IMG/VR virus record: IMGVR_UViG_3300034072_000926 | Location: 372,001-436,000 of that record | Reading direction: 5' to 3' (one strand) | DNA: 64,000 bases | Shown here: positions 1 to 29,282 of the stretch, in pieces | Numbering within the stretch: position 1 is the first letter of the stretch | Layout of the letters: each line of letters opens with the position of its first letter | Notes under the pieces: generated by a model | What the model was told of the DNA's origin: nothing | Database searches by the model: none | Seen by the model: only the letters and a program-made list of their open reading frames with translations | Program-made: the position numbers and the translations under genes

Positions 1-375
1 GTCAGCCTTTGCCTGTGCGCTCTGTTGGCGACGCTCCTGCCAGGTCGGCTTGGGCTTTTGCTTTGCAGGAATAGGAACCAGATCCAACAAGCCGTCATCA
101 TCGCGACTGAACAGCTTGTATTCGCCGACACGACGATCCATCAGCATTTGATGGAGGGCTTCATGACGGAGAGCGATCATCTTCGACTCGTCGCTCATTT
201 CCTCGACCATCTCTCGAATGTTGACCGGGATCGAAATCGCCGACAACGTGATTGACATTGCGGGCTTGTAATAGTCAGTGAGGGCAAGGATCCGACCGAT
301 CCGATCGTTTATTTTCGGATCCTTGAGCATTGCTTCCACTTGGGCGTCCATGGCCTTGTTGAATTCCTCGCTCAT
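1..375 (-). CDS. hypothetical protein (runs off window start)
   Basis: ATG at 375 overlaps the upstream stop (TAATG); open frame MSEEFNKAMDAQ... to window edge. Confidence 0.7.
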   Translation of the reverse strand, partial: MSEEFNKAMDAQVEAMLKDPKINDRIGRILALTDYYKPAMSITLSAISIPVNIREMVEEMSDESKMIALRHEALHQMLMDRRVGEYKLFSRDDDGLLDLVPIPAKQKPKPTWQERRQQSAQAKAD

Positions 376-638
376 TAGCACGACTCCCTCTGTTCGAATT
401 GGATATAGTCCGCAGCATCGTAGAGGCCGAGGCGATTGAGCACCGCACGGGCATCAGCGAGCTGTTCATCCAGTGGGCGCTGCGTCTGTGCATATGCGGG
501 AATGGACTTCAGATCTTCGAAGATCGAGAACGCCTTGTTTTCCGTGCCGAAAAGCGCACGAGCGACCATTCGATCCTTCGCTTGTGCGATGGCTTCGTCC
601 TTGGATCCTGCTTCGTAGCTGCTGGGTGCGGTCTGCAT
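375..638 (-). CDS. hypothetical protein
   Basis: ORF directly after cassette SD GGAGATCGAAA. Confidence 0.8.
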   Translation of the reverse strand: MQTAPSSYEAGSKDEAIAQAKDRMVARALFGTENKAFSIFEDLKSIPAYAQTQRPLDEQLADARAVLNRLGLYDAADYIQFEQRESC

Positions 639-697
639 TTTCGATCTCCGTTTATTGCCTACTCACCTGTTTTAACAGATTACTGGGTAGGGTCAAC
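639..697 (-). promoter_or_regulatory. repeated early promoter/RBS unit
   Basis: GTTGAC...TGTTAAAACAGGTGAG...GGAGATCGAAA-ATG. Confidence 0.8.
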
Positions 698-901
698 CAG
701 AATTTCACATTCTTTTGGCAAAACAAGGAATGTCTCTCCCTGATATTCGCCCTCGGTGATCCTTATGTAGAAATACCGCGTATCGTATTCTTCGCCATCC
801 CAGAAGTAGCCATCGAATACTGCATTGGCTTCGACTGCACCGGTCCAAGGAGTAGAAAACGTGGCGCGCAGTTTGTCGCCCTTTTTGAGTTCATTCTGCA
901 T
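680..901 (-). CDS. hypothetical protein
   Basis: GAGGAGG SD before MQNELKKGDK; start re-called from ORF track. Confidence 0.7.
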   Translation of the reverse strand: MQNELKKGDKLRATFSTPWTGAVEANAVFDGYFWDGEEYDTRYFYIRITEGEYQGETFLVLPKECEILVDPTQ

Positions 902-911
902 CACTGCCTCC

Positions 912-1100
912 TCAATATTCGACATGGAGTTCGACACTCTGCAGACTTCCCTTGATGTCATAGATGACATCAGTGACAGTGAAATATCCCTCAGGGGTTC
1001 TGATGCGTTCGCCGACACGAGGAACATGACAGCTCTGATACTGCGCGATTTCCGTCCAGCAGCTATACCGTTCCCGGTAGACAGTGATTGTCAGTTCCAT
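912..1100 (-). CDS. hypothetical protein
   Basis: ATG after AGGAGATCGAAC; MELTITVYRE... Confidence 0.75.
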   Translation of the reverse strand: MELTITVYRERYSCWTEIAQYQSCHVPRVGERIRTPEGYFTVTDVIYDIKGSLQSVELHVEY

Positions 1101-1156
1101 GTTCGATCTCCTGTTTCTGTTGTCCACAGTTTAGCAGGATAGGTGAACAAGTCAAC
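1101..1156 (-). promoter_or_regulatory. repeated early promoter/RBS unit
   Basis: GTTGACTTGTTCACCTATCCTGCTAAACT...AACAGGAGATCGAAC. Confidence 0.85.
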
Positions 1157-1160
1157 CAAT

Positions 1161-1191
1161 AAAAAAGGGAAGTGTTTCCACTTCCCTTTTT
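1161..1191. terminator. intrinsic terminator (possibly bidirectional)
   Basis: AAAAAAGGGAAGTG-TTTC-CACTTCCCTTTTT perfect stem with A/T tails. Confidence 0.85.
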
Positions 1192-1368
1192 GATCTTTCA
1201 TCAGCTTCACGGCATTATCCCGTCTTCAGCACCCTTATCCGAGCCGTGTTAACTTCCTTGAGTATGCAATGATATCATAACAACGGAACACTCAAGGTTT
1301 GCAGCTGATGCTTCCTAGCCCATGATCTGCGGACTACAAAAGGAGCCGGGGGCACCGAATCTGTTTCT
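1161..1368 (-). ncRNA. candidate structured small RNA (~200 nt)
   Basis: own TTGACT-N16-TAAGTT promoter (to 1398) and terminator; no ORF; nested stems CATCAGCT/AGCTGATG, CCTTGAGT/ACTCAAGG, CACGGC/GCCGTG. Confidence 0.6.
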
Positions 1369-1402
1369 AGAACTTAACTCCTAACCATAAAGAGTCAAGC
1401 TA

Positions 1403-1846
1403 TTATTTTGCGGATTTCAACAATTCCTCAAGGGAGATACGCTCCACAAACCGTGCGCTAGGCATGTGGAAGAGAATCTGGGTTTCGCCCTTCTTCGTCT
1501 TCTTGCCGTTGACCTCGTAGATGCTCAGAGCCATCGAATCATTTGCACGATCGGCCAAGACCTTCAAGTCCTCGATGGACTGTCTTGGGAACCATTCAAA
1601 GACCTGGGCCATTGATTCAAAACCGAAATACCATTCCCGGCGATCCCGATGAACCCATTCGTATGTGGCCTTCTTGCCCTTACCCTTGCCTTCCCACCAG
1701 TCCTTGAGCAGCGGATCCAGTTCCGGACCAACGTGAACAGTAGGAGGAACATCTCCGCGCTCGATAGCCGCTTCGCTGATCTTGAACCCAAAGCCCCGGC
1801 TGTAAATGCCTTCGTCCTTGTTGTTCTCGAACCGGAAAATGAGCAT
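1403..1846 (-). CDS. hypothetical phage protein
   Basis: 147-aa ORF after cassette SD. Confidence 0.8.
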   Translation of the reverse strand: MLIFRFENNKDEGIYSRGFGFKISEAAIERGDVPPTVHVGPELDPLLKDWWEGKGKGKKATYEWVHRDRREWYFGFESMAQVFEWFPRQSIEDLKVLADRANDSMALSIYEVNGKKTKKGETQILFHMPSARFVERISLEELLKSAK

Positions 1847-1901
1847 TTCGATCTCCTCTTGCTTACCTGTTCATTTTAGCAGAATAGGTGAGCAAATCAA
1901 C
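1847..1901 (-). promoter_or_regulatory. repeated early promoter/RBS unit
   Basis: TTGATT..CTCACCTATTCTGCTAAAAT...AGGAGATCGAA. Confidence 0.8.
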
Positions 1902-2214
1902 CGATCTTTTTCAGTTTCAGAGCATTGATCTTGTCGGCCTCGATGCAGCCGACCCTGATCGAGAAGACGTCACTGTTCTCATATACCGCCAAGGTGAGCG
2001 AGGCATCACCGTTAACCCAAAGCTCAGTTTCTGAGGGTTGGAATACTTCCTTGAGAGAAAAGCCGAACGTGGCGAGGATATTTGCGCGATCCTCCCACTT
2101 TGCTTGATTTGACGAGTAGCAGATCTTGTCGCCGGTCATAGGAAGCGACCACGCATTCCGGCCTATGTTGCTGAGCCCGTCAAATGCTTTGCGAAGCTTG
2201 GTCATGTTGGACAT
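1897..2214 (-). CDS. hypothetical protein
   Basis: ORF after cassette SD. Confidence 0.75.
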   Translation of the reverse strand: MSNMTKLRKAFDGLSNIGRNAWSLPMTGDKICYSSNQAKWEDRANILATFGFSLKEVFQPSETELWVNGDASLTLAVYENSDVFSIRVGCIEADKINALKLKKIG

Positions 2215-2268
2215 ATCGATCTCCTCTGTTTACCAAATCGGTGTAGCAGATATGGTGATAACGTCAAC
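2215..2268 (-). promoter_or_regulatory. repeated early promoter/RBS unit
   Basis: TTGACG..TCACC..TGCTACAC...AGGAGATCGAT. Confidence 0.75.
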
Positions 2269-2508
2269 CTATTTTGCACCAAATGGTCGAGGGAAACCGA
2301 GAATCTGCTCGATAGCAATGTCGAGGTATTTGCTTGCTTCGCGCAAGCTCATGTTCATCTTTGACAGGTCAGTTTCCGACGGAAGATGAATCTCAGGAAG
2401 ACCTACCTTATACGCGAGAAGCCGCGCAGCATCTTCATCAAGACCTTGAAACGCCCCGGCATCCTTATGCAGCTGGATTATGGCATTGGCCGTCTCTTGA
2501 ATGTTCAT
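2269..2508 (-). CDS. hypothetical protein
   Basis: TAATG coupling with upstream ORF; MNIQETANA... Confidence 0.7.
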   Translation of the reverse strand: MNIQETANAIIQLHKDAGAFQGLDEDAARLLAYKVGLPEIHLPSETDLSKMNMSLREASKYLDIAIEQILGFPRPFGAK

Positions 2509-2669
2509 TACTTGGACACCTTGTTGCAATTGCCGAACGGAGCGCAGTAGGGTTCGCCGTCATCGCCGGTTGCGTAGACAATTCCTTCAACGACCTCATC
2601 GACGAAAGCGGCGACGATCACACCGGGCTGAATCTCCATCAATACTTCGTCACCGACATAGAGCTGCAT
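2508..2669 (-). CDS. small hypothetical protein (53 aa, below ORF-track cutoff)
   Basis: MQLYVGDEVLMEIQPG...KVSK* after cassette SD. Confidence 0.75.
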   Translation of the reverse strand: MQLYVGDEVLMEIQPGVIVAAFVDEVVEGIVYATGDDGEPYCAPFGNCNKVSK

Positions 2670-2728
2670 GTTCGATCTCCTTTTGCTGCCTACTCACCTG
2701 TTTTAGCACAAGTAAGTAGGCAGTCAAC
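2670..2728 (-). promoter_or_regulatory. repeated early promoter/RBS unit
   Basis: TTGACT...TGCTAAAACAGGTGAGTAGGCAGCAAAAGGAGATCGAAC. Confidence 0.85.
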
Positions 2729-2733
2729 CTCTT

Positions 2734-3546
2734 TTAGGCGTCCAGCTTCTTTGCTGCAATGCGCTGGGACAGCTTATTGTCGACCTTGACCATAACGTCC
2801 TTGTAGGGTGCCATGATCCGCACTTCCTTGCCCTCAAATGTGGTCACCGACACGCCACCCGAAGGGAAGTAGCGCGAGACTGTTCCGAACGCAATACCGG
2901 CGCCCGTCATGCACTGGCTGCTGTATTCCTTGTGCGTGAACATCACAGTATCGCCGACCTCGACCGTCTGACCGAGTTGGTCGACGAACTTCTTGACATT
3001 CGCCATCACTGCTTCGCGTTCGGCCGCTGCCTGACCCTTTGCCTTCTTCGTGAACTTCAGTTCGGTTGGACCATCATAGTCGAGCAGGACAGTAAGGGCA
3101 GCATATCCGCCCAGTTTCTTGCTAACATCGGTGCCATCGTCGAGGATGAACCGATATTCCGGATTCTGGTAGCTGCTGGCTTCCAATTGACCGCCAATGC
3201 ACTGGCAGTCAACAACCATTTTCTTGTACGAATCCCACATCTGGTAGTGATGAATTACAGGAGTGTCGCAGTCGACCTTCTTGTATTGATTAACAAAGCC
3301 GCCCTTCTGGTCATCTTCGTTTGTCATTTCGCTGAATTCGAGACGTTTGCGCTTGAATGCAGCGAGATTGAATCGGATGATCGAACCATTTCGCGCCCCT
3401 CCGTCGATCCGAATTGCGAAGGGCTTCTCACCAAGCTGGTAGGGCTCCAGCTTCTTGATCATCTCCATCTGTATTTCTTTCGAAGCAAGCAGATCAACCC
3501 AGCGCCCGTCGAAGAAAGTCCGCAGTTCAATTTCGGTGTAGGTCAT
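2734..3546 (-). CDS. hypothetical protein with C-terminal KOW/SH3-like barrel; paralog of 29756..30556
   Basis: FVDQLGQTVEVGDTV...FGTVSRY resembles FFDRLDQEVNIGDLV...VGVVKGY. Confidence 0.75.
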   Translation of the reverse strand: MTYTEIELRTFFDGRWVDLLASKEIQMEMIKKLEPYQLGEKPFAIRIDGGARNGSIIRFNLAAFKRKRLEFSEMTNEDDQKGGFVNQYKKVDCDTPVIHHYQMWDSYKKMVVDCQCIGGQLEASSYQNPEYRFILDDGTDVSKKLGGYAALTVLLDYDGPTELKFTKKAKGQAAAEREAVMANVKKFVDQLGQTVEVGDTVMFTHKEYSSQCMTGAGIAFGTVSRYFPSGGVSVTTFEGKEVRIMAPYKDVMVKVDNKLSQRIAAKKLDA

Positions 3547-3628
3547 GTTTCGATCTCCGTATTGTTTGCTTCTGTTGTCCTCAACTTAGCAGAAATAGGT
3601 GAAGCGTCAACCGCTTATTCACCTATTT
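3547..3628 (-). promoter_or_regulatory. repeated early promoter/RBS unit with dyad AATAGGTGAA/TTCACCTATT around -35
   Basis: boxes flank GTTGAC in inverted orientation. Confidence 0.85.
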
Positions 3629-4145
3629 TGTGAAAATCCTTGACCTCCCCTGCGCGACGTTCCGCTGCGGTCGTCCGTCGCCAGCCCAGTTCCTTCATCT
3701 TCGCAGTCTGTTCCTTGCCGCGCAAGTAGGCAAACTGGTTCCGCTCCTTGTCGAGTTCCCGCTGACGCTCTACGGCGTTCTTGTGCGCGAGGCTGTCTGC
3801 GTCGTGAGCCATATTCAGCGTGGCCGAGAAGCTGTTCTCATAGGCTACTGCGCCGTAGTGCCAGTTGGTCGAGAAGGTGTGGCCATCGGGGTGCATCAGC
3901 TTGTCGCCGTAGTTGACGTGACTGCCGTCCGGCGTAATGCGGTCATGTTTGTCGACGGGGCGGAAACCCAACGCGATAGCGCGGTCGTGCATACGATGCA
4001 GCATATTGGAACCGCCGTGCCCGCCGCGCTTATAGAATCTCGCAGAAGCCGGATAGACCATCTTGCCCTCATGGAAATGAGCTTCCTGGAAATCGACGTT
4101 CTGGCCGCTTCCGAGGATCTTCTTTGCGAGCTTCTGAAATTCCAT
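3615..4145 (-). CDS. hypothetical protein
   Basis: 176-aa ORF after cassette SD. Confidence 0.8.
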   Translation of the reverse strand: MEFQKLAKKILGSGQNVDFQEAHFHEGKMVYPASARFYKRGGHGGSNMLHRMHDRAIALGFRPVDKHDRITPDGSHVNYGDKLMHPDGHTFSTNWHYGAVAYENSFSATLNMAHDADSLAHKNAVERQRELDKERNQFAYLRGKEQTAKMKELGWRRTTAAERRAGEVKDFHKIGE

Positions 4146-4204
4146 GTTCGATCTCCGTTTGCTGTCTACTCACCTGTTTTAACACAAACAGGTGAGCAAT
4201 CAAC
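4146..4204 (-). promoter_or_regulatory. repeated early promoter/RBS unit
   Basis: TTGATTGCTCACCTGTTT..TGTTAAAACAGGTGAG inverted repeat across -10. Confidence 0.85.
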
Positions 4205-4206
4205 CA

Positions 4207-4533
4207 CTAAATGATCATTCGGGCAATTTCTTCCAGCTTCTGCCGGTCGCGGGTGAAGGAGATCATATCGTAGCCGCGCTTGGGATCGGTCACCGCGTAG
4301 CAGGCCTTGGCTTGCATCTGCGACTTGGGAATCGATCCGATTTCGATCCAAGCAAGCGTTTCCTGATGCTGGACCTGGACGACCGCGAAGGACTGCTCCT
4401 CGTAGGCGTTACGGCGGATGACCATTCGCAGCTTGCGACCCTTGTAGGAGAAGTGCTGCTTCATATACCAGGATTGCGACTGGTTGTAAAAGTTGGCCTG
4501 GTCGAGTGCCTTGAACGAGGAACGTGCTACCAT
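4207..4533 (-). CDS. hypothetical protein
   Basis: MVARSSFK... start after GGAGATCGAAA. Confidence 0.8.
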   Translation of the reverse strand: MVARSSFKALDQANFYNQSQSWYMKQHFSYKGRKLRMVIRRNAYEEQSFAVVQVQHQETLAWIEIGSIPKSQMQAKACYAVTDPKRGYDMISFTRDRQKLEEIARMII

Positions 4534-4593
4534 TTTCGATCTCCATGTTTGCTTTGTTGTCCTCAACTTAGCAGAATAGGTGAAAGTGTCAAC
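4534..4593 (-). promoter_or_regulatory. repeated early promoter/RBS unit
   Basis: TTGACACTTTCACCTATTCTGCTAAGTT. Confidence 0.85.
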
Positions 4594-4597
4594 CAGT

Positions 4598-4690
4598 TTA
4601 TACGATAAAAACAACAAATAGCACGATTGCGAAAACCGCGCTACTCATTACCAGACCAACGAGTCCGTTAGCATTTGTGCCCTTACTCAC
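4598..4690 (-). CDS. small membrane peptide (30 aa)
   Basis: GTG overlapping upstream gene end; hydrophobic AVFAIVLFVVFIV. Confidence 0.45.
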   Translation of the reverse strand: MSKGTNANGLVGLVMSSAVFAIVLFVVFIV

Positions 4691-5273
4691 CCTCTGCCTC
4701 CCGTAGCACCACAACACGGATATATTTACCCGTCGGATGCGCCCCCTGGGTGTAGGTGCCCTCAATGACGCGGAAACCCAGCTGTTCCATGTCGTGTTCG
4801 TCGAGGCGGGAAACATTCTTCCACCCTGCGCGGATCATTTCCGACTTGATATCGGCGAGACGGTTTGCGATGAATACCTTACCATTTCGGTCAGCATATC
4901 GCACCGGCCAATCCTCGAGCGCTTTTTTGACGCCGGCGATGAGCTTGAGGGTGCGCTCATTTTCGTCGACGATTTCGCGAGCTTTCCGACCCATATTTCG
5001 GAAGGCATTCGGATTCTCGCGGAAGAAATCTGCGACCGCCTGATTTTCGGCGATGATTTTCTCGGTTTCGCGCTGCTGGTGCTTGGCGAACAATTCATTT
5101 GCCAATTCTAAGTTAACGGGCGTTAACCCATTTGGGTAGACGGCCTTGAACCGCTGGAGGAGGAATTCAGGGTTAACATTGTAAAAAGGAGCAACTTCGG
5201 CTGCGACCTCCTCCGGAGTGCCTCCCTTGCGGAGTTCCTGGATAAAGTCGTCGAACGCTTCTGCCTTGCTCAT
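4683..5273 (-). CDS. hypothetical protein
   Basis: MSKAEAFDDF... after AGGAGATCGAAG. Confidence 0.8.
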   Translation of the reverse strand: MSKAEAFDDFIQELRKGGTPEEVAAEVAPFYNVNPEFLLQRFKAVYPNGLTPVNLELANELFAKHQQRETEKIIAENQAVADFFRENPNAFRNMGRKAREIVDENERTLKLIAGVKKALEDWPVRYADRNGKVFIANRLADIKSEMIRAGWKNVSRLDEHDMEQLGFRVIEGTYTQGAHPTGKYIRVVVLREAEGE

Positions 5274-5334
5274 CTTCGATCTCCTGCGCTGCATTTCGTG
5301 TCACCACTTTAGCAGAACAGGAGACTGAGTCAAC
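5274..5334 (-). promoter_or_regulatory. repeated early promoter/RBS unit (near-identical to 14263..14323)
   Basis: shared GCTGCATTTCGTGTCACCACTTTAGCAGAACAGGAGA. Confidence 0.85.
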
Positions 5335-5545
5335 CAGTTTTCTGGTAGTCTGTGGATTTTCCATCCAGGATCTTGATCGTATCCCTATCTTGTAGGCCAC
5401 GATTGGCCATGGCGCTGACCTCGTCGGCTAGCCGACGTTCTGATCCGGGACCGTCCGGGACAAAGCGGCAATCAATGTTGCCGCTTCCGTTATTGAGGAT
5501 GACCCAAGTTCCATTGTCCTTGTCCATTAGTAGAACAATTCCCAA
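5330..5545 (-). CDS. hypothetical protein
   Basis: ORF coupled to upstream gene. Confidence 0.6.
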   Translation of the reverse strand: MGIVLLMDKDNGTWVILNNGSGNIDCRFVPDGPGSERRLADEVSAMANRGLQDRDTIKILDGKSTDYQKTG

Positions 5546-5922
5546 TCGCTAGCCAGTTCGGCATAGAAGGCCGCCTCAAAGCGCGCCATGTTGTTGGACA
5601 TGAAGGACGTCGACTGATTGGTGAACCGAGCCTTGTCGATTGCGGTCTTGACGATGAAGTTGTAGAGCCGGGTAACAGCTTCTTCCTCAGTCTCGGGCAG
5701 TTCTTCGCCGGCATGGCTGGCGCGCTTGTCTTCCCATCCCTGGATGCTTGCGAGGTAATAGCCGGCGACCTGCTTCTGTGCGGCCGCCTTCATGGCATCT
5801 TCGCCCCAGATGAAAGCGTGGACGGGATTCTGAGCCAGCTCTTCCTTGAACTTGTCGAGTTCACGATCGGCCTGTGCAACGATGCTCTCGAACTTCTTTT
5901 TGATCTGCTGCATGGTGGGCAT
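5527..5922 (-). CDS. hypothetical protein
   Basis: MPTMQQIKKKF... after cassette SD. Confidence 0.8.
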   Translation of the reverse strand: MPTMQQIKKKFESIVAQADRELDKFKEELAQNPVHAFIWGEDAMKAAAQKQVAGYYLASIQGWEDKRASHAGEELPETEEEAVTRLYNFIVKTAIDKARFTNQSTSFMSNNMARFEAAFYAELASDWELFY

Positions 5923-5982
5923 ATTCGATCTCCTGTTTGCTTCTGTTGTTCTCAACATAGCAGAACAGGAGATCATGTCAAC
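5923..5982 (-). promoter_or_regulatory. repeated early promoter/RBS unit; spacer is exact complement of SD
   Basis: TTGACATGATCTCCTGTTCTGCTATGTT...AACAGGAGATCGAAT. Confidence 0.85.
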
Positions 5983-5989
5983 CAGTTTC

Positions 5990-6496
5990 TTACTTGGTTG
6001 CCTTAGCAGCCCAAGATTGCGACATGCCGTAGATATCACCCAATGCGCGCTGCGACATCTTGCCACCGGAGGCTTTGACGATATCGGCAATCTGCTTCAC
6101 AGCATCGATGGGCTTGATCCGACCACATGCCGGCTTCGACGTCTTCAGTGTTGCAAGCGCGTCAATGTCGGCCTGCGTGATAACATTCGAGCGAAGAAGC
6201 TGCTCGAGAATGTTGGACGAAATGACCTTGACCTTTGCTGAAGTCTTAGCAGGCTTCATAGCCTGCTTCATCTTATGATGATCGCCTTTGGCTCGGATAG
6301 TAACACCGGCCAGAGCAAGATTATCACGTACCTGCTTCGGAGAAACCTTGTAAGTCTCTGCGAGATCTCGCAGAGACTCGCCACTCTGATATCGACGCTG
6401 CGCTTCTCCATCGAAAATGGCCTTACCGAGAAGACCGGGAATGGTGAGGTTCTTGAAAGCTGCGATAGTCATAAAATCACAAGTCCTTTGTTGCAC
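5990..6496 (-). CDS. helix-turn-helix DNA-binding protein
   Basis: YQSGESLRDLAETYKVSPKQVRDNL HTH; second HTH-like MSQRALGDIYGMSQSW. Confidence 0.65.
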   Translation of the reverse strand: MQQRTCDFMTIAAFKNLTIPGLLGKAIFDGEAQRRYQSGESLRDLAETYKVSPKQVRDNLALAGVTIRAKGDHHKMKQAMKPAKTSAKVKVISSNILEQLLRSNVITQADIDALATLKTSKPACGRIKPIDAVKQIADIVKASGGKMSQRALGDIYGMSQSWAAKATK

Positions 6497-6612
6497 TAAA
6501 GCATTTTGCTTTTAGTGTTTGTTTGTTTGTGCATTGCTGCGTTTGTTTAACTGCCCTTTAAGAGCACGTTACCTATTCTATATACGGGAATAGGTAACGC
6601 CGCGTCAACCTA

Positions 6613-7104
6613 TTAAAAAGGTTCGACACAGAAATTTGGCACGAAAAGAACAAGGCTCGGAAGGTCTGCAAATCCGAGTGGTTTGCCCTTGAAGCGAACA
6701 GGAATACAGTTCTCAGGAATTTGCGATTTGCTGTAGCTGTCAAGCCGAGCATAGGTTCCATGTTGGCCGACTTTGAGGGGCTCTTCCCCGACCCTGACAT
6801 TACGCTTGATACGAAGCTTTGTCCCGACCTTGAATGCCTTTGGATGCTGCTCAGAGAGCAGCGCACGGGTGGCCTCCCACGTGTTCAAAGTCTTCAGGGC
6901 GTCCTGCATTGCCGCAAGCTCGTCCTCAAACTCTTTGATCTCCTCAGGGGAGAAAGGACCAGGGTGTTCGCTATTGCAGAGCAATATCAGCTCACATGTC
7001 TTGATCGACGATGTGAACGATTCGCGATAACGCTCATAGTCGCGAAGGGAGGTCGCAATGCCTCCCTCCATGAAATTCTCGATGACCGTTTTGTAGAGTC
7101 TCAT
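6613..7104 (-). CDS. hypothetical protein
   Basis: ATGA overlap with upstream ORF. Confidence 0.75.
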   Translation of the reverse strand: MRLYKTVIENFMEGGIATSLRDYERYRESFTSSIKTCELILLCNSEHPGPFSPEEIKEFEDELAAMQDALKTLNTWEATRALLSEQHPKAFKVGTKLRIKRNVRVGEEPLKVGQHGTYARLDSYSKSQIPENCIPVRFKGKPLGFADLPSLVLFVPNFCVEPF

Positions 7105-7307
7105 CGAAATGCAGCCCGTCCCAGCTTATAGAGAATGAACAGACCGACCAGCGTAGGAAGGATGATCATGCCCGCCGATGTCAGGACATAGAGGGTTGCG
7201 CCGACCACCCAGAGGATGAACAGAAGGATTTTCACAGCCATTGCACCCACTGCTAGGATGCAGCAAATGATGATCAGGAACAGTAGACAACCCAACATTT
7301 CATTCAT
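7101..7307 (-). CDS. small membrane protein
   Basis: highly hydrophobic 68 aa; GGAGG SD. Confidence 0.7.
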   Translation of the reverse strand: MNEMLGCLLFLIIICCILAVGAMAVKILLFILWVVGATLYVLTSAGMIILPTLVGLFILYKLGRAAFR

Positions 7308-7465
7308 TCTTCGATCCTCCAGATCACGACCTTGTCGAACATTGCCGACTTTGCGGAGATCACACTGGCCCGCTTGATGGGGTCAGTGGCCTCTTCCGTA
7401 GTTATCTCGAACGGGTGTTCCTTACGGTGACGCCCGTTCTTGGTCGTGATGATCAGCTTTGCCAT
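7304..7465 (-). CDS. small hypothetical protein (53 aa)
   Basis: MAKLIITTKNGRH...IEE*, coupled to neighbours at both ends. Confidence 0.65.
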   Translation of the reverse strand: MAKLIITTKNGRHRKEHPFEITTEEATDPIKRASVISAKSAMFDKVVIWRIEE

Positions 7466-7794
7466 TAGGCGCTGACCGAGCCGGCGAGCAGCGAAGCGTT
7501 GGTTGCTTCGGTGAAGCGCGCCAGGGTGAACCAGCCATACTTGCCGGGGATCAGCGCAACCTTGGCGCCCGGTTCCGGCAGATGGTCAGCGATTGCGCTG
7601 GGCAGGCCGATCCGACGACCCGAACCCTTGACGCTCAGGTTCTTGAGCAGCTGGTCGTCCGAGAGGTTGGCATCGCTGGTGCGTTCGGTGAACCGGATCA
7701 TGACGCGACCTTCCTTGACGGTCACGCGAGCCTTGGTGTTCTGGCCGATCTTTTCCGACGTCGTAGCTGAATTGAAATTCACAGTCTTATACAT
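7465..7794 (-). CDS. 'KYGWF' paralog family protein 1
   Basis: RVTVKEGRVMIRFTER...GKYGWF shared with 48260 and 51082 ORFs; AAGGAGA SD. Confidence 0.8.
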   Translation of the reverse strand: MYKTVNFNSATTSEKIGQNTKARVTVKEGRVMIRFTERTSDANLSDDQLLKNLSVKGSGRRIGLPSAIADHLPEPGAKVALIPGKYGWFTLARFTEATNASLLAGSVSA

Positions 7795-7939
7795 GAGTAT
7801 CTCCTTGTTCTCTTCGGAGCACCATTGCCCCGCTTCATACTCTGAAACTAGCACCAGGTTTAGAACTGTCAACCAGGTTTTTCATATTAGGAAGTAAATC
7901 TATTAGAAAATGACCAGTATCGAGATAGGTTTGTTACTC

Positions 7940-7984
7940 AAAAGAAAAGATGGTTTGCGGTCATCGCAAACCATCTTTTCTTTG
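7940..7984. terminator. bidirectional intrinsic terminator
   Basis: AAAAGAAAAGATGGTTTGCG-GTCAT-CGCAAACCATCTTTTCTTTT. Confidence 0.85.
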
Positions 7985-7995
7985 AAATGGAATGT

Positions 7996-8331
7996 TTAGG
8001 CAACGAGTCCGTAGGTCTCGCGCTCTTCACGTTCATCTGCGGTCATCATCTTCCCCAGCGCGTGGAGGTAGCCGAAGCGAGCAGCCTGACGCCATGCGCC
8101 GTTCTCGTCGCCCTTCATTGCGAACAGCTTGACCGCATCGCTGTTGGTCAGATCATTGTCTTCGCTGTCGAGACCGTTGCCGTTGAAAACTGCGAAGAAA
8201 TCGCTCTCGATGGGCTGGCATACGGTGACCAGAACTTCGTCGCCGCAATAGATTTGGATGAGATGTTCGCAATCGAAAGTTGCAGTCGTCAGCGCATAGT
8301 TGCGACGTGCGATCTCGTTTTCGATGGACAT
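7996..8331 (-). CDS. hypothetical protein
   Basis: AACAGGAG SD and TTGAC promoter at 8332-8393. Confidence 0.75.
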   Translation of the reverse strand: MSIENEIARRNYALTTATFDCEHLIQIYCGDEVLVTVCQPIESDFFAVFNGNGLDSEDNDLTNSDAVKLFAMKGDENGAWRQAARFGYLHALGKMMTADEREERETYGLVA

Positions 8332-8400
8332 TTGGAAACTCCTGTTTGTGTCTTTGTATCACCTAAATAGAGTAGATCTAGGTGAGGGTCAACATCTTTT

Positions 8401-8634
8401 TCAGAACTTTTTCAGGATTTTATCCATCTCTGCGATCTTTGCCTTGAGGTCATCAAGGAGGGCTTGATTGCGACGGTCCACTTCTTCCCGCTCCTTCCCG
8501 AATACCGGCATCTGCACGATGATAGCGAGCTCGGACTTAGTGACCATTTTGACGAACTCGTTCCGCAACGAGAGCGCCATCTTCTGGTTCAGCTTGTCGC
8601 GGTTATCCCACCACTGTTTGACGGGGACTGTCAT
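8401..8634 (-). CDS. hypothetical protein
   Basis: ATGA overlap. Confidence 0.7.
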   Translation of the reverse strand: MTVPVKQWWDNRDKLNQKMALSLRNEFVKMVTKSELAIIVQMPVFGKEREEVDRRNQALLDDLKAKIAEMDKILKKF

Positions 8635-8999
8635 CCCCTCACCGCCGCTGCATCGGCTTTTGCGGGATTGGCCTTTGCTTCTTCGGCCCAGCCAACATAG
8701 GCTTCGTAGACACGCACCACTAGCGCATCACATGCCTGCGTGAGGGTAAGCTGACGGGACTCGAAGCCGAGAACTTCCTGGACGAACATGCCGACCACTT
8801 CGTCCTTCATTGCCAACCAGGCATCAGAGGTGCGCGTCGTGTTCGGCGAAATCGTCTTTGCCAGTTCGTGTGCCGGCGTCGAGACCTGCTGAACCAGCAG
8901 AATTGCGAGACTGCCGAGACCACGGAATTCAGTTCCGCCGCGAACCAGCTGACGAACCGCATAGTCCTTGGCCCAAAGCCTTGCTTCGTTGATATCCAT
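8631..8999 (-). CDS. hypothetical protein
   Basis: after cassette SD. Confidence 0.8.
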   Translation of the reverse strand: MDINEARLWAKDYAVRQLVRGGTEFRGLGSLAILLVQQVSTPAHELAKTISPNTTRTSDAWLAMKDEVVGMFVQEVLGFESRQLTLTQACDALVVRVYEAYVGWAEEAKANPAKADAAAVRG

Positions 9000-9056
9000 G
9001 TTCGATCTCCTTATTGCCTATGTGCCTATTTTAGCACATAGGTGGATAGAGTCAAC
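9000..9056 (-). promoter_or_regulatory. repeated early promoter/RBS unit
   Basis: TTGACTCTATCCACCTATGTGCTAAAAT...AAGGAGATCGAAC. Confidence 0.85.
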
Positions 9057-10964: not shown

Positions 10965-10994
10965 ACCGCAACACTACACCTATTTAGGTGAACG

Positions 10995-11657
10995 TCAAGC
11001 GAAGAACACAAGGTCCAAGCGCGGAACCAAATCTTCCTGTCCAATTCCACGAATGAGCTGTAGAACTTTGTCCTCGACACCCTTGTATTTGGCATGGAGA
11101 ACACTGACGACTTTCTCACCAGTTACAGGTGCCTCGGTGAGACGAACAATAGACGCCTCAGGAAACTCGCAGACGCCCGCTCGACATAGGCTCCATGCTG
11201 CACTAAGCAGGGCGCAAGTGTGTTCCTCATAGTTCTCATAGACGCTCTTAAGCCCTATACGACTACCGTCATCAGCAAGATAGCTGAGCACTCGCTTACC
11301 TTGTTTGCTGAACTTCTGCCAATCGAGTCTATCTTCTGGCAAGCTCGCAATAATCTGCTCAGCAACCGGCCCAAGTCGTCCCTCAAAGACAACATGATCG
11401 GGAGCAAGACCACGACGTAGGATGCAACGGATGAACTCGTTAACGTCCAGGGTATTCTGCTCGACATGCAGATCGTCAATGAGGATCGCGGCAACAACCA
11501 AGCTATCGGCGGTGCTCTCCCGATCCAGATATTCCTTCATGACAGTCAGAGATTCGTCCTGTTCATCAGAGAAGATGGAGTCAGCGTAGATGTGCGCAAA
11601 CTCAACAAACATCTCCGGGCGAGGGAGGTTAGGATTATCGGGAAGATGACTGCCCAC
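10995..11657 (-). CDS. HUP-fold-like protein resembling the SCO2522 family
   Basis: VEFAHIY, ILIDD, TCALLSAAW, SVL..KY..VE motifs (recalled similarity). Confidence 0.5.
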   Translation of the reverse strand: MGSHLPDNPNLPRPEMFVEFAHIYADSIFSDEQDESLTVMKEYLDRESTADSLVVAAILIDDLHVEQNTLDVNEFIRCILRRGLAPDHVVFEGRLGPVAEQIIASLPEDRLDWQKFSKQGKRVLSYLADDGSRIGLKSVYENYEEHTCALLSAAWSLCRAGVCEFPEASIVRLTEAPVTGEKVVSVLHAKYKGVEDKVLQLIRGIGQEDLVPRLDLVFFA

Positions 11658-11705
11658 TTAGATCTCCTGTTTCTTGTCCTCTCGATAACAGGAACGGTGA
11701 ACAAG

Positions 11706-12008
11706 TCAACCAGTTTGTTTGGATTGGCAAAACTCACGAATAAACTGAGACCAACGAAGCTTGAACAGCATTGCATCGTCCTTCGATTTTATCCAATAAG
11801 TTCGCCAAGGCTGATGGTGCCCTATGCCCAACCAAGTCCAGCTATGGTTGAGGTTTTCGGAACCCCAGGCAACGATTTCATCATGAAGACCACGACGATC
11901 ATCCTCATGCGAATATCGATTGGATCGGATGCTATAGGTCTTAATGAATTGGATCTTAAATCCAAACCATTGTTCGGTATCAGCTTGAGGAGGGCAAGGA
12001 CCAACCAT
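11706..12008 (-). CDS. 'DAMLFKL.W' family protein
   Basis: C-terminal WIKSKDDAMLFKLRW. Confidence 0.75.
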   Translation of the reverse strand: MVGPCPPQADTEQWFGFKIQFIKTYSIRSNRYSHEDDRRGLHDEIVAWGSENLNHSWTWLGIGHHQPWRTYWIKSKDDAMLFKLRWSQFIREFCQSKQTG

Positions 12009-12546: not shown

Positions 12547-12593
12547 TCACCTCGAGTAGCATAACCCTTTCCCCGTTTCAAAAGAAAAGCGAA

Positions 12594-13028: not shown

Positions 13029-13061
13029 CAGGTTTTTGCTGGTTGACGATTTTGTTGTCTG

Positions 13062-13890: not shown

Positions 13891-14262
13891 TTAGGCCGCG
13901 AGGACCATCTTAACATCAAAATCCAAGGGTGCCCGATTGCTGTCAGTCATGCGCTCGTTGACGATGAAACCGGGGCTGCAGGGGCACGACGAGCAACCCG
14001 CATAGGTCGAGAAGCGCAGCTTGCCCTTAAACTCCGGGAAAGCGTCCTCGATCATCTTGCGCGCTGCATTGATCTGCTGGCGGAAAGAGAGTTCGCCGAA
14101 CACGCTCTGGTCGATGTTGATGTAGAGGCGCGATGCCTTGTCCCAGTCGCGCATCGTATAGCGGCGATCATATGCGGTCTTGCTGGTCGACCAGTGTCGA
14201 CGGGCGCGCTGCGAGAGAGTTGCGTTGAACGTTCCGAACTTCGTTTCGCAAACCTGGCACAT
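13891..14262 (-). CDS. hypothetical phage protein with Cys motif
   Basis: MCQVC and AGCSSCPCSPGF. Confidence 0.8.
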   Translation of the reverse strand: MCQVCETKFGTFNATLSQRARRHWSTSKTAYDRRYTMRDWDKASRLYINIDQSVFGELSFRQQINAARKMIEDAFPEFKGKLRFSTYAGCSSCPCSPGFIVNERMTDSNRAPLDFDVKMVLAA

Positions 14263-14323
14263 ACTCGATCTCCTTTGCTGCATTTCGTGTCACCACTTTA
14301 GCAGAACAGGAGATCAAGTCAAC
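14263..14323 (-). promoter_or_regulatory. repeated early promoter/RBS unit
   Basis: TTGACTTGATCTCCTGTTCTGCTAAAGT...AAGGAGATCGAG. Confidence 0.85.
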
Positions 14324-18645: not shown

Positions 18646-18975
18646 TTAGTGGCGAGTGTTGAGCTGACCGCGCGACATGGCGGAGTAATACTGAGAGGGC
18701 ATTGCCGACTTCAGCGTCGGAGCAAATGCAGCCTGGTAATTGTTGCCCATCAGCTCGTAACCCTTGATCAGCTTCTCACGGAGCAGATCATGCGGCATGC
18801 CGTTGATTTCGGTCTTGAAGCTGAGCTTGCCGTTCCGACGACCCCAGAAGCGAACCATCGTATTGCCGACCTTCGCAATGCCCCAGACCTTATCATTCTG
18901 GGCTGCGCCGCCGCGGCGACCACGGGCACCTGCTTCATAGTAGTGGGCTGCTGCGAGAATCTCTACCTGTGCCAT
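18646..18975 (-). CDS. WGR-domain-like protein
   Basis: DKVWGI...VRFWGRR...KLIKGY. Confidence 0.65.
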   Translation of the reverse strand: MAQVEILAAAHYYEAGARGRRGGAAQNDKVWGIAKVGNTMVRFWGRRNGKLSFKTEINGMPHDLLREKLIKGYELMGNNYQAAFAPTLKSAMPSQYYSAMSRGQLNTRH

Positions 18976-19053
18976 GTTCGATCTCCTGTATGTTGTTCCG
19001 ATAAAACAATCATAGCAGAAATAGGCGAAGCGTCAACCGCTTTTTCACCTATT
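18976..19053 (-). promoter_or_regulatory. repeated early promoter/RBS unit with dyad around -35
   Basis: near-identical to the 3585-3628 segment. Confidence 0.85.
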
Positions 19054-21412: not shown

Positions 21413-21753
21413 GAGCACCAGTAGCTTTCCGAGGCCACCGAGCAAGCGAAGGGCGTTCCTTCAGCTTCCTGAGTATAGCCGCCGAACCGAGCATTGCGGA
21501 CCCACTTGTAACCTTCCCGAGCCGGCGGAAGATCTTCGAACTTGGTGCCCTCCGGCATGTTCATCGGGCTGACCTTGCGGTCAATGTCGATGCAGGAAAT
21601 GTTGTAGAACTTGCCCTCAGCATACTTCTCCCAACGCTGGAAGGTCTTCACGTTCGTGAACTCCCGAGTGCGCTCGATCATGCGCGACGGCGTCGAATAG
21701 TGGGCGGTGATCTTTTCGACGGTTTCGGGATTTTCGATCTTCGTCAGTTCCAT
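21409..21753 (-). CDS. hypothetical phage protein
   Basis: C-terminal TPFACSVASESYW; cassette unit 21754-21813. Confidence 0.8.
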   Translation of the reverse strand: MELTKIENPETVEKITAHYSTPSRMIERTREFTNVKTFQRWEKYAEGKFYNISCIDIDRKVSPMNMPEGTKFEDLPPAREGYKWVRNARFGGYTQEAEGTPFACSVASESYWCS

Positions 21754-21834
21754 GTTCGATCTCCTGTTTGCTTCTGTTGTCCTCACAATAGCAGAAAGAG
21801 GTGAAGCGTCAACAGGAGATTTCACCTATTATGA

Positions 21835-22502: not shown

Positions 22503-23053
22503 TAGCGGGACCCTCCATCCTGATATGCCTTGTAGCGGCGCTCGAATTCGTCCATATCGTCGCGATGGATGCGAATGCTGTGGTAATCGCCTGTATCGAG
22601 ATCGCGGATCTGACCGCTGTATCCACGCCCGTTGTTGAAGCGCAAGCCCTCGCCGAGATTGGGATAACCCTCGAGCCGTCCGTCGATATAGCGAGAGCCG
22701 TATTGGCATTGCTGACGGAGACGTGTCCGACAAAAGTCGCCGAAGCTGCTGAACCCACCGTCATTGTAGAGGGGATGGACGATGTTGCAGAGGATGGCCA
22801 TACCTTCCTCGCTTTCATTGGTGTCGATGGTTTCGCCGGTCGCTTCGACAATCTTCGCCTCAACGAGGATTGGAACGAATTCTGCGAGAATCCAGGACTG
22901 ATTGAAGCCTGGCTTGGGATCACGTGCCGAGACATACGCTTCGATCTCGCCCTCGCCATGTTTGCGGGTCGATTCGAAGACGATGGAGTTGTTGAATTCG
23001 CTGAGGACGACCGAGACTGGATCGCCATTGTAAATGACTTGAACGGTTTTCAT
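22502..23053 (-). CDS. hypothetical protein
   Basis: after cassette unit 23054-23108. Confidence 0.8.
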   Translation of the reverse strand: MKTVQVIYNGDPVSVVLSEFNNSIVFESTRKHGEGEIEAYVSARDPKPGFNQSWILAEFVPILVEAKIVEATGETIDTNESEEGMAILCNIVHPLYNDGGFSSFGDFCRTRLRQQCQYGSRYIDGRLEGYPNLGEGLRFNNGRGYSGQIRDLDTGDYHSIRIHRDDMDEFERRYKAYQDGGSR

Positions 23054-23108
23054 GTTCGATCTCCTGTTGTTATGTGCCTATGATAGCAGAACAGGAGACC
23101 GTGTCAAC

Positions 23109-29044: not shown

Positions 29045-29218
29045 TTACTTGCTCTCGTAGCGACGGATTGCAGCTTCGGCGCGGGCTTTGCTAACATAGC
29101 CCCAACCGTTGTTGGCCGGGCTGTTGAAGCCGGAAAAACCACACCGGATATACCAGCGACCGTGCTTTTCCTCGACCGCATCTGCTTCATTAGCGCGGGT
29201 AATGTGGTTGTAAAACAT
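29045..29218 (-). CDS. hypothetical protein
   Basis: after cassette unit 29219-29278; GFNSPANN motif. Confidence 0.75.
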   Translation of the reverse strand: MFYNHITRANEADAVEEKHGRWYIRCGFSGFNSPANNGWGYVSKARAEAAIRRYESK

Positions 29219-29282
29219 GCTCGATCTCCTGTTTGCTTCTGTTGTTTTCACACTAGCAGCAAACAGGAGGGAGTCAACCTGT

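What the first reader, a model, noticed from the sequence alone, without database searches (positions are those of the whole stretch)
3585..3628. AAYAGGWGA box in dyads around -35/-10, and a built-in anti-SD in the promoter spacer
Seen: the spacer carries TCACCT(A/G)TT or TCTCCTGTT, with the inverted copy in one of three places: upstream of -35 (3615-3628, 19040-19053, 21820-21830), just after -10 (AACAGGTGAG at 660-672, 2692-2704, 4168-4196, 12990), or in the SD itself. At 5923-5982 and 14263-14323 the spacer GATCTCCT(GTT) is the reverse complement of the SD (AAC)AGGAGATC. TCACCT/TCTCCT also mimics the 16S anti-SD. Two models: (a) operator dyads for a phage transcription factor; (b) an RNA switch in which read-through transcripts fold spacer onto SD and are silenced, so each cassette is translated only from its own TSS. 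Model (b) parallels the known RBS-sequestering hairpins of T4 genes e and soc.
Basis: partly seen in the sequence, partly recalled or inferred. Interest (0 to 1): 0.72.

Follow-up and report, generated by a model that had tools for sequence, protein, structure and literature searches.

The report
Promoter stem-loop cassettes hiding ribosome sites
The repeated "box" is one arm of a stem-loop built into about ninety near-identical early promoter cassettes of a 465-kb T4-like giant phage. The other arm usually covers the gene's ribosome-binding site, so each small gene is probably expressed only from its own promoter; this is a new twist on the known PeSL cassettes of T4-like phages.

Summary
AAYAGGWGA occurs 41 times in the window against about 2 expected, and 35 of the 41 copies sit at fixed places in sigma70-type promoter-to-start-codon cassettes on the minus strand.

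The box is not a stand-alone operator. It is the commonest version of the 5' arm of a stem-loop that straddles the -10 element and the predicted transcription start.
- The arms covary. Cassettes with unrelated spacer sequences pair with their own 5'UTR or Shine-Dalgarno (SD) region.
- Native cassettes fold better than chimeras, at z = -14 in this genome and z = -8 and -9 in two related 436- and 462-kb phages. The result survives family clustering (z = -12) and ortholog swapping.
- In 51 of 94 cassettes the 3' arm covers the SD. In 25 it lies just after the -10. In 13 the box pairs with an upstream copy around the -35, and the reported locus 3585-3628 is mainly of this kind.
- The stems have no T-rich tails.

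The closest known element is the PeSL cassette of T4-like phages. In the PeSL phage RB49, only 8% of cassettes pair the SD with the promoter.

The best reading is that the hairpin forms only in read-through RNA and silences or attenuates the downstream gene. No transcription-start or translation data exist, and whether the structure acts as RNA or DNA is not settled. It is a new variant of a known kind.

The parts
3544..3632 (-). Focal cassette, running from the end of upstream ORF 3615-4145 to the start codon of ORF 2734-3546.
   Evidence: Sequence. The fold is -22.5 kcal/mol with z = -4.0, and 0 of 200 shuffles fold as well. The layout is given.
3618..3628 (-). Upstream arm (sense AAATAGGTGAA). 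It overlaps the last codons of the upstream ORF, whose stop codon TAA is at 3615-3617.
   Evidence: It pairs with 3593-3603 to form an 11-bp perfect stem that encloses the -35.
3605..3610 (-). -35 hexamer TTGACG, preceded by an A-rich patch and GCGG.
   Evidence: The A-tract at -10..-6 before the -35 is shown.
3593..3603 (-). Spacer box (sense TTCACCTATTT). Here it is the 3' arm of the stem around the -35.
3583..3591 (-). Extended -10 element, TGc-TAAGTT.
   Evidence: The TG at -15/-14 is kept in 86-87% of 16-nt-spacer cassettes.
3544..3558 (-). Conserved translation start region, GGAGATCGAAAC-ATG. The SD GGAG is at 3555-3558 and the ATG at 3544-3546.
   Evidence: GGAGATCGAA occurs 41 times on the minus strand and 4 on the plus strand.
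5920..5981 (-). Class S cassette. The spacer TGATCTCCTGTT pairs with AACAGGAGATCG, which contains the SD.
   Evidence: -27.6 kcal/mol, z = -8.3. 6 of 6 SD-window positions are paired.
14260..14322 (-). Class S cassette. The spacer TGATCTCCT pairs with AGGAGATCG (SD).
   Evidence: -23.2 kcal/mol, z = -5.2.
5271..5333 (-). Class S cassette. GTCTCCTGT pairs with GCAGGAGAT, and there is an inner CTGC/GCAG stem.
23051..23107 (-). Class S cassette. CGGTCTCCTGTT pairs with AACAGGAGATCG, including one G:U pair.
   Evidence: -20.1 kcal/mol, z = -5.3.
29216..29277 (-). Class S cassette. CTCCTGTTTGCT pairs with AGCAAACAGGAG.
2667..2727 (-). Class T cassette without the box. A 14-16-bp stem (GCCTACTTACTTGT with ACAGGTGAGTAGGC, two G:U pairs) has the -10 in its loop, and the SD is free.
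   Evidence: -23.7 kcal/mol, z = -5.6. This is a covariation example.
4143..4203 (-). Class T cassette with the box. GCTCACCTGTTT pairs with AAACAGGTGAGC right after the -10.
   Evidence: -19.1 kcal/mol, z = -3.9.
8997..9055 (-). Cassette with variant arms, CCTATGTGCC with GGCACATAGG, around the -10.
   Evidence: -15.9 kcal/mol, z = -4.2.
6567..6608 (-). Promoter with perfect 12-bp arms, CGTTACCTATTC and GAATAGGTAACG, flanking TATATA. It lies upstream of the weak HTH-like ORF 5990-6496.
18973..19053 (-). Class U cassette. AAATAGGTGAA upstream pairs with TTCGCCTATTT in the spacer (one G:U pair), and a second stem reaches the SD.
21751..21830 (-). Cassette with an upstream AATAGGTGAA copy and a TCTCCTGTT copy abutting the -35. 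The latter pairs with the SD region in the predicted fold.
636..696 (-). Class T cassette without the box in the spacer. AACAGGTGAGTAGG follows the -10 and pairs with CCTAC..CTGTT.

Best explanation
The box is the commonest sequence version of one arm of a stem-loop built into PeSL-like regulatory cassettes of a 465-kb T4-like jumbo phage.

Each cassette fills the gap between two co-directional small genes. In order it holds:
- the stop codon of the upstream gene, at or just before the -35;
- an A-tract;
- (C)TGG-TTGAC;
- a 16-nt spacer;
- TGn-TAnnnT;
- a UTR of about 25-35 nt;
- GGAGATCGAA-N-ATG.

The spacer, sometimes with part of the -10, is complementary to the cassette's own UTR, and in about half of the cassettes to the SD itself.

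Inferred mechanism: few canonical terminators separate the genes, so RNA started at upstream promoters reads through. That RNA contains both arms and folds, and the fold hides the SD (class S) or forms a stable stem at the junction (classes T and U). Expression of the downstream gene from foreign transcripts is therefore blocked or attenuated. RNA started at the cassette's own promoter begins inside the stem-loop, lacks the 5' arm and is freely translated. The box looks like the 16S anti-SD simply because it has to pair with an SD or an SD-like AGGTGA.

Shown: the motif enrichment, the cassette architecture, the arm covariation, its conservation in two relatives, and the contrast with RB49. 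Inferred: the transcription start site, read-through, action at RNA level, and the effect on translation.
For: Enrichment and placement.

Architecture: -35, 16-nt spacer in 79 of 94 cassettes, TG at -15/-14 in 86-96%, and an A-tract. 83 of 94 cassettes are on the minus strand.

Covariation:
- Native spacer-plus-UTR MFE is -13.25 against -9.35 kcal/mol for chimeras, permutation z = -14.
- The non-box subset gives z = -11.
- Relatives G001 and G002 give z = -8.0 and -8.8.
- 75 cluster representatives give z = -11.9.
- In the ortholog swap test native beats swapped 23:4 (p = 0.0012) and 17:4 (p = 0.0005).

Position: in an unbiased scan the 5' arm peaks in the spacer and the 3' arm between the -10 and the SD, and about 60% of strong stems straddle the predicted start.

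SD:
- The SD is paired with the promoter region in 69% of cassettes in G000 and 67% in G002.
- The predicted unpaired probability is 0.30 in read-through RNA and 0.58 in own-start RNA, Wilcoxon p = 5e-11.
- Anti-SD 5-mers occur in 52-73% of spacers in G000 and G002 (48% in G001), against 9% in background and 2-7% on the other strand.

Termination and polymerase: the stems have no T-rich tail and terminator-like sites are not enriched (22 found, 18.5 expected). Upstream stop codons lie a median of 9 nt before the -35. No phage RNA polymerase or sigma70-type domain was found, so host sigma70 RNA polymerase is the likely reader.

Precedents: PeSLs (PMC2839356) and T4 genes e, soc, 49 and I-TevI (PMC3014915).
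Against: There are no transcription-start, 3'-end or translation data. The only RNA runs are short, low-depth metatranscriptome contigs.

Action at RNA level rather than DNA level is not proven.
- The sense strand folds better than the antisense strand only in G000 (p = 0.006), not in G001 or G002.
- Internal G:T mismatches do not significantly outnumber A:C mismatches, 15 against 10.

SD occlusion in native cassettes is only slightly stronger than in chimeras (0.30 against 0.35 unpaired, p = 0.04), because most spacers carry a generic CCT-rich anti-SD.

In 38 of 94 cassettes, and in 70% of G001 cassettes, the SD is not covered, so SD masking cannot be the only role. The reported locus mainly belongs to that group. 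TCACCT pairs with AGGAGA only with an A:A mismatch.
Confidence: 0.57

Rival explanations
1. The stem-loops are purely transcriptional terminators or attenuators, the function proposed for PeSLs. They stop or reduce transcription coming from upstream cassettes, and the overlap with the SD is incidental.
For: In phi1/RB49 one PeSL stem-loop cut lacZ expression as strongly as the rrnB T1 terminator (PMC2839356). Class U stems such as 3593-3628 end in TATTT followed by CTGCTA, which is moderately U-rich. Classes T and U, 38 of 94 cassettes, leave the SD free.
Against: The stems have no T-rich tail, with a mean of 1.6-2.2 T in the 8 nt after the stem. Terminator-like sites are not enriched. The 3' arm prefers the SD and the spacers are strongly enriched for anti-SD words on the sense strand only. 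RB49 PeSLs do not show this: only 8% pair the SD with the promoter.
Confidence: 0.2
2. The box and its inverted copy are operator half-sites for a phage DNA-binding protein, for example the HTH-like product of 5990-6496, which represses or times the early promoters.
For: The box is conserved in sequence in 29 of 94 spacers and overlaps core promoter elements. ORF 5990-6496 has a near-threshold HTH_58 match of 23.3 bits against a cut-off of 23.8. G:T and A:C mismatch counts do not exclude a DNA-level constraint.
Against: Pairing is kept while sequence, distance between arms (3 to about 30 nt) and orientation vary. 65 cassettes without the box show the same own-arm complementarity, z = -11. A dimeric factor could not read such varied dyads. 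The ORF at 58169-58507 has no Pfam match.
Confidence: 0.07
3. The inverted repeats act in DNA. They could be cruciforms or hairpins that make the promoters sensitive to supercoiling, or preferred sites for the recombination that shuffles gene cassettes.
For: Homology blocks between G000 and G002 end at cassettes more often than expected, 25 of 88 ends against 8.3% expected, p = 3e-8. Orthologous genes carry different cassette types. Metatranscriptome contigs join at cassette borders. PeSL recombination was mapped in or beside the stem-loop (PMC2839356). There is no clear sense-strand wobble bias in G001 or G002.
Against: Recombination needs homology, not intra-cassette complementarity. Many stems have bulges, G:T pairs and loops of 20-30 nt, which are poor for cruciform extrusion. 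Nothing at DNA level explains the preference for the SD or the strand-specific anti-SD content.
Confidence: 0.08
4. The hairpin is a translational coupling device. In polycistronic RNA it makes initiation at the downstream gene depend on a ribosome finishing the upstream gene, which melts the stem. In class U the upstream arm, which overlaps the stop codon, competes for the box.
For: Upstream stop codons lie a median of 9 nt before the -35, and about 19 appear to use the TGA inside TTGAC. Terminating ribosomes therefore stop 10-30 nt from the 5' arm. In class U the stop codon lies inside the stem-loop, at 3615-3617.
Against: The 5' arm mostly lies beyond the roughly 12-15 nt that a terminating ribosome covers (general knowledge). 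Every gene has its own strong promoter, which makes coupling unnecessary. There is no direct evidence.
Confidence: 0.08

Closest known systems
PeSL (promoter-early stem-loop) cassettes of T4-like phages (Arbiol et al. 2010, PMC2839356; Comeau et al. 2014, PMC4122927)
   Same: Both are repeated intergenic units of about 70-100 bp made of an upstream stop codon, an A/T-rich patch, a consensus sigma70 -35/-10, a stem-loop placed in the spacer, over the -35 or -10, or just downstream, and an SD plus start codon. Both are concentrated in regions of small genes without known homologs, in phages with a T4 gp23-type capsid. In both, cassette borders coincide with gene gain, loss and replacement. Even the translation start region is alike: GGAGAATCAAA-ATG in RB49 and GGAGATCGAA-N-ATG here.
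   Different: PeSL stems are short, G/C-tract hairpins, mostly inside the spacer or tight around the -10. They were interpreted and tested as terminators. Here the loop is long, the 3' arm lies in the UTR, and it covers the SD in 54-69% of cassettes against 8% in RB49. The stems are not G/C tracts and have no T tail. The host phage is about three times larger, uncultured and from soil or subsurface samples.
T4 genes e, soc, 49 and I-TevI (and Aeh1 mobE): SD-sequestering hairpins with a promoter inside the 5' arm (review PMC3014915)
   Same: Long transcripts from upstream promoters fold the translation start region into a helix. A promoter lying in the DNA that encodes the 5' strand gives transcripts that lack it and are translated. 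The geometry is the same as in class S cassettes.
   Different: In T4 these are a handful of special genes, the inner promoter is a late (gp55) promoter, and the purpose is temporal delay. Here the inner promoter is sigma70-type, the arrangement is repeated in dozens of neighbouring genes, and the likely purpose is insulation between cassettes. No experiment exists for this phage.
IS10/Tn10 'fold-back inhibition' against outside promoters (Davis, Simons and Kleckner 1985; recalled from memory, not retrieved)
   Same: Read-through RNA from outside carries a segment complementary to the transposase start region and is not translated. The element's own promoter starts downstream of that segment.
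   Different: That is a single gene in a mobile element, not a serial array, and there is no sequence relation. The comparison rests on my recollection only.

Membership tests
PeSL cassettes of T4-like phages | A strong sigma70-consensus early promoter (-35 and -10) in the intergenic repeat. | tested here: met
   TTGAC-N16-TGnTAnnnT is found in 94 cassettes. TG at -15/-14 is present in 86-96%. Activity was not assayed.
PeSL cassettes of T4-like phages | [quoted passage not shown] | tested here: met
   A+T is 72-80% at -10..-6 before the -35, against about 50% elsewhere. The stop codon lies a median of 9 nt before the -35. The patch is short, about 5 nt.
PeSL cassettes of T4-like phages | A stable stem-loop at one of several positions relative to the promoter: in the spacer, over the -35 or -10, upstream, or just downstream. 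| tested here: met
   The classes are S 51, T 25, U 13 and none 5. Fold z-scores run from -3.9 to -8.3. Arm covariation is shown.
PeSL cassettes of T4-like phages | An SD and start codon of the downstream gene at the 3' end of the repeat. | tested here: met
   GGAGATCGAA-N-ATG.
PeSL cassettes of T4-like phages | Clustering in hyperplastic regions of small genes without known homologs, in a T4-like phage. | tested here: met
   The conserved start-region motif GGAGATCGA clusters at genome positions 340-440 kb. Small ORFs have no Pfam match. Gp23 (PF07068) matches at E = 1e-80, and tail sheath and DNA polymerase are present.
PeSL cassettes of T4-like phages | The stem-loop works as a transcription terminator or attenuator. 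| not testable with these tools
   By sequence there is no T-rich tail and no enrichment of terminator-like sites, so a canonical intrinsic terminator is unlikely. Function needs an assay.
PeSL cassettes of T4-like phages | Cassettes are the sites of recombination that shuffles genes. | tested here: inconclusive
   Homology-block ends are enriched at cassettes, p = 3e-8. Orthologs carry different cassette types. Contigs join at cassette borders. All of this is consistent, but no recombination product was shown.
T4-type SD-sequestering hairpin with an internal promoter (e, soc, I-TevI) | The SD and/or AUG lies in a helix in upstream-initiated RNA, and the promoter lies in the DNA that encodes the 5' strand. 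| tested here: met
   This is a prediction only. It holds for 51 of 94 cassettes, and SD unpaired probability is 0.30 in read-through RNA against 0.58 in own-start RNA.
T4-type SD-sequestering hairpin with an internal promoter (e, soc, I-TevI) | The inner promoter is a late (gp55, TATAAATA) promoter that gives temporal delay. | tested here: not met
   The inner promoter is sigma70-type with a -35 and an extended -10.
Operator dyad of a sequence-specific repressor | A conserved half-site sequence at fixed spacing and orientation. | tested here: not met
   Arms differ in sequence, spacing and orientation while staying complementary.
Intrinsic (rho-independent) terminator | A G+C-rich stem with a short loop followed by a U tract. 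| tested here: not met
   A true example for contrast lies at 1162-1191.
Rfam RNA families | A match to any curated covariance model. | tested here: not met
   There were 0 matches at gathering score in the whole window.

The most novel reading that the evidence does not exclude
A clade of 436-465-kb T4-like phages may have turned the spacer of its sigma70 early promoters into a built-in anti-SD. Dozens of tandem genes would then each be translated only from their own promoter, a hard-wired, genome-wide insulation of expression cassettes. In some cassettes a third arm overlaps the stop codon of the preceding gene and competes for the box, which would link this switch to upstream translation.
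Probability: 0.35. Interest if true: 0.7.

Novelty: new variant of a known kind. Interest (0 to 1): 0.55.

Why it matters
If the inferred mechanism holds, promoter spacers here carry a second code. These spacers are usually treated as sequence-neutral.

The arrangement would let a phage pack tens of strong promoters head to tail without terminators and still keep each gene's output independent. That addresses a design problem shared with synthetic biology.

The finding also extends PeSL-type mobile regulatory cassettes from T4-sized phages of enterobacteria and vibrios to uncultured giant phages. It suggests that PeSL stem-loops may act on translation as well as on transcription.

The cassettes are close to the E. 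coli consensus, so the idea can be tested directly with reporters even though the phage is uncultured.

Tried and rejected
- RNA evidence: the window is found in four wastewater metatranscriptomes, but only as short, low-depth Logan contigs. These give no direction and no 5' ends, so they say nothing about transcription starts.
- Wobble test for RNA against DNA: G:T outnumbers A:C 15 to 10, which is not significant. The sense-versus-antisense folding bias is significant only in G000. I therefore do not claim RNA-level action as shown.
- Phage databases: neither megablast nor tblastn found a match in the 'phages' collection.
- Phage-encoded players: no sigma70 region 2, RNA polymerase beta, RNase III, RegB or RegA was found. 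The RegB and RegA searches had no positive control. There was only a sub-threshold D12 methylase hit.
- Terminator reading: the scan shows no enrichment.
- Single-linkage clustering at 65% or 60% identity collapses almost all cassettes into one group. That leaves too few representatives, with z = -2.1 at 13 clusters and no significant result at 3.
- The joint 1111 to 3563 is probably a paralogous cassette (the 21812 locus) mapped to the wrong place, not a deletion.
- The literature search for IS10 fold-back inhibition did not retrieve the original paper.
- Alignment-based covariation tools were not used, because arm positions differ between cassettes. Permutation and swap tests were used instead.

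Full report
CONTEXT

The window is bases 372001-436000 of a single 465,259-bp virus record from IMG/VR, which CheckV rates 100% complete. It was assembled from a subsurface or soil metagenome.

The genome encodes a T4 gp23-type major capsid protein (PF07068, E = 1e-80), a tail sheath, a family-B-type DNA polymerase and a ribonucleotide reductase. I found no sigma70 region 2, no RNA polymerase beta subunit and no RNase III. It is therefore a giant, distant T4-like myophage that probably uses the host's sigma70 RNA polymerase for early genes.

In window 1-30000 nearly all genes are small, lie on the minus strand and have no Pfam match.

THE OBSERVATION

AAYAGGWGA occurs 41 times in the window against 1.97 expected. 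Read in gene sense, the hits fall at fixed places in one repeated unit. The unit has these parts in order:
- an A-tract;
- (C)TGG-TTGAC;
- a 16-nt spacer (79 of 94 cases);
- TGn-TAnnnT;
- a UTR of about 25-35 nt;
- GGAGATCGAA-N-ATG.

Of the 41 hits, 15 are TCWCCTRTT in the spacer, 11 are the complement at the SD, 5 lie just after the -10 and 4 lie upstream of the -35.

The conserved start region GGAGATCGAA occurs 41 times on the minus strand and 4 on the plus strand, clustered at genome positions 340-440 kb.

WHAT IT IS

The box is only the most frequent version of a more general rule. I listed 94 promoter-to-start cassettes genome-wide. In these, the spacer is complementary to the cassette's own downstream UTR even when the sequence is quite different.
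- 2667-2727 has a 14-16-bp stem without the box.
- 6567-6599 has perfect 12-bp arms.
- 8997-9055 has CCTATGTGCC pairing with GGCACATAGG.
- Far outside the cluster, TGTCCGATCCTCC pairs with GGAGGATCGGACA and CCTCCTGTG with CACAGGAGG.

I tested this by swapping halves, joining the spacer and -10 of cassette i to the UTR of cassette j.
- Native cassettes fold at a mean of -13.25 kcal/mol and chimeras at -9.35. The permutation z is -14, and no permutation out of 20,000 did as well.
- The 65 cassettes without the box give z = -11, and the 29 with it give z = -7.7.
- Keeping one representative per sequence cluster leaves 75 clusters and gives z = -11.9.

A scan that did not assume where the arms lie places the 5' arm in the spacer and the 3' arm between the -10 and the SD. 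About 60% of strong stems straddle the predicted start site.

RELATIVES

Two complete relatives have the same cassettes. They are IMG/VR records of 435,856 and 462,455 bp, here called G001 and G002, both with terminal repeats. They show the same native advantage, z = -8.0 and -8.8.

For orthologous genes, swapping promoter halves between genomes worsens folding in 23 of 27 informative pairs with G002 (p = 0.0012) and in 17 of 21 pairs with G001 (p = 0.0005).

In G001 the arms are often CACCAGTTCT with AGAACTGGTG around the -10, and once the orientation is reversed. What is conserved is pairing, not a sequence.

CLASSES

From minimum-free-energy folds of the read-through region:
- class S, 51 of 94: the 3' arm covers the SD;
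- class T, 25: the 3' arm lies right after the -10 and the SD is free;
- class U, 13: the box pairs with an upstream copy so that the stem encloses the -35;
- none, 5.

In the fold of 3544-3632 the reported locus 3585-3628 has the class U arrangement. AAATAGGTGAA at 3618-3628 overlaps the last codons of the upstream ORF, whose stop is at 3615-3617. It pairs with TTCACCTATTT at 3593-3603. The fold is -22.5 kcal/mol with z = -4.0, and the SD stays free. With 32 nt of upstream sequence the fold keeps that stem but also pairs the spacer region downstream and pairs the bases next to the SD with a distal upstream segment. The classifier therefore scores this cassette as class T.

MECHANISM

The stems lack T-rich tails, with 1.6-2.2 T in the next 8 nt. 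Terminator-like sites are not enriched, 22 found against 18.5 expected. A textbook terminator at 1162-1191 shows what one looks like here.

Upstream genes end a median of 9 nt before the -35, so there is no room for separate terminators and read-through is expected.

The 3' arm prefers the SD. The SD pairs with the promoter region in 69% of G000 cassettes, 67% of G002 and 30% of G001. Spacers carry 5-mers of the 16S 3' tail in 52% of G000 cassettes, 48% of G001 and 73% of G002. The background is 9%, and the opposite strand gives 2-7%.

The predicted unpaired probability of the SD is 0.30 in read-through RNA and 0.58 in RNA starting 7 nt after the -10.

A hairpin that exists only in read-through RNA silences the downstream gene (class S) or attenuates it (classes T and U). 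The cassette's own transcripts begin inside the hairpin and escape it.

CAVEATS

The transcription start is inferred from promoter geometry. The only RNA data are short metatranscriptome contigs without ends.

SD occlusion is only slightly better in native cassettes than in chimeras (0.30 against 0.35, p = 0.04), because most spacers share a generic anti-SD.

Tests that could separate RNA-level from DNA-level action are weak. G:T against A:C is 15 to 10, which is not significant. A sense-strand folding advantage appears only in G000.

COMPARISON WITH WHAT IS KNOWN

PeSLs of T4-like phages are repeated cassettes in hyperplastic regions. They are made of an upstream stop codon, an AT-rich patch, a consensus sigma70 promoter, a stem-loop at one of five positions relative to the promoter, and an SD with a start codon. 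One stem-loop was shown to reduce downstream reporter expression, and the cassettes mediate gene shuffling (PMC2839356; PMC4122927).

The elements here meet every sequence-level criterion of that family; see the membership test. They also show hints of shuffling:
- homology blocks with G002 end at cassettes (25 of 88 ends, p = 3e-8);
- orthologs carry different cassette types;
- contigs from wastewater relatives join at cassette borders.

I ran the same pipeline on the PeSL phage RB49. Its stems are GGGGATC..GATCCCC inside the spacer or GGGAGT..ACTCCC around the -10, and only 8% of its cassettes pair the SD with the promoter.

The second relevant precedent is the set of T4 genes e, soc, 49 and I-TevI. 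There a late promoter inside the 5' arm frees the SD in late transcripts (PMC3014915). The geometry is the same, but the promoter class, the number of genes and the purpose differ. IS10 fold-back inhibition is a further analogue, which I give from memory only.

VERDICT

The element is a PeSL-type cassette, so it is a known kind. The systematic placement of the 3' arm on the SD and the anti-SD content of the promoter spacers, shared by two of the three giant phages, is a new variant. No Rfam family matches.

Noticed in passing
window 1-30000 and genome 340-440 kb; also L045-L052: The translation start region is almost invariant, GGAGATCGAA-N-ATG, including the 7-nt SD-to-start spacer and a GATC. 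It is shared by the three giant phages and resembles RB49's GGAGAATCAAA-ATG. This is more conserved than ribosome binding needs. No RegA or RegB homolog was found.
   Followed up: partly
genome-wide cassettes (for example window 21807-21812 and others): Upstream ORFs end a median of 9 nt before the -35. In about 19 cassettes the open frame appears to end at the TGA inside the TTGAC hexamer itself, so gene end and next promoter overlap.
   Followed up: partly
window 13023-13047 and 21135-21158: Two -35 boxes face each other as perfect palindromes, GTCAACCAG..CTGGTTGAC and GGTTGACATGTCAACC. These could be divergent promoters or another stem-loop class.
   Followed up: no
window 1162-1191: This is the only textbook intrinsic terminator in window 1-20000. 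It has a 13-bp stem, GGGAAGTG..CACTTCCC, flanked by A and T runs, reads as a terminator on both strands, and lies directly upstream of the 1155 promoter.
   Followed up: no
window 2670/3549, 5341/5526, 5988/5526: Contigs from wastewater metatranscriptomes join these points, which lie at or close to cassette borders. This suggests that related phages lack or rearrange single genes between cassettes. Depth is low and some joints may be paralog mis-mapping.
   Followed up: partly
window 18973-19036, 20236-20294; genome 359091, 438942; G001 and G002 loci: A UTR family with the conserved core TTTATCGGAA(C/G) recurs in all three phages. It pairs with the TGTTTC of the spacer by G:U pairs, and its own role is unknown.
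   Followed up: no
window 25081-26286, 54303-56402, 14330-16039: The larger genes among the small ones encode an FtsK/SpoIIIE-family ATPase (E = 3e-61), an AAA+ ATPase (E = 1.5e-37) and a protein with a cytidylyltransferase-like domain.
   Followed up: no
G000 versus G002/G001 orthologs: Orthologous genes often sit behind different cassette types in different phages. For example, the 4203 cassette is of the AACAGGTGAGTAGACAGC type, but its G002 ortholog has the GAGGGCAACAGAAGC type. Promoter and UTR move together as a unit, independently of the gene.
   Followed up: partly
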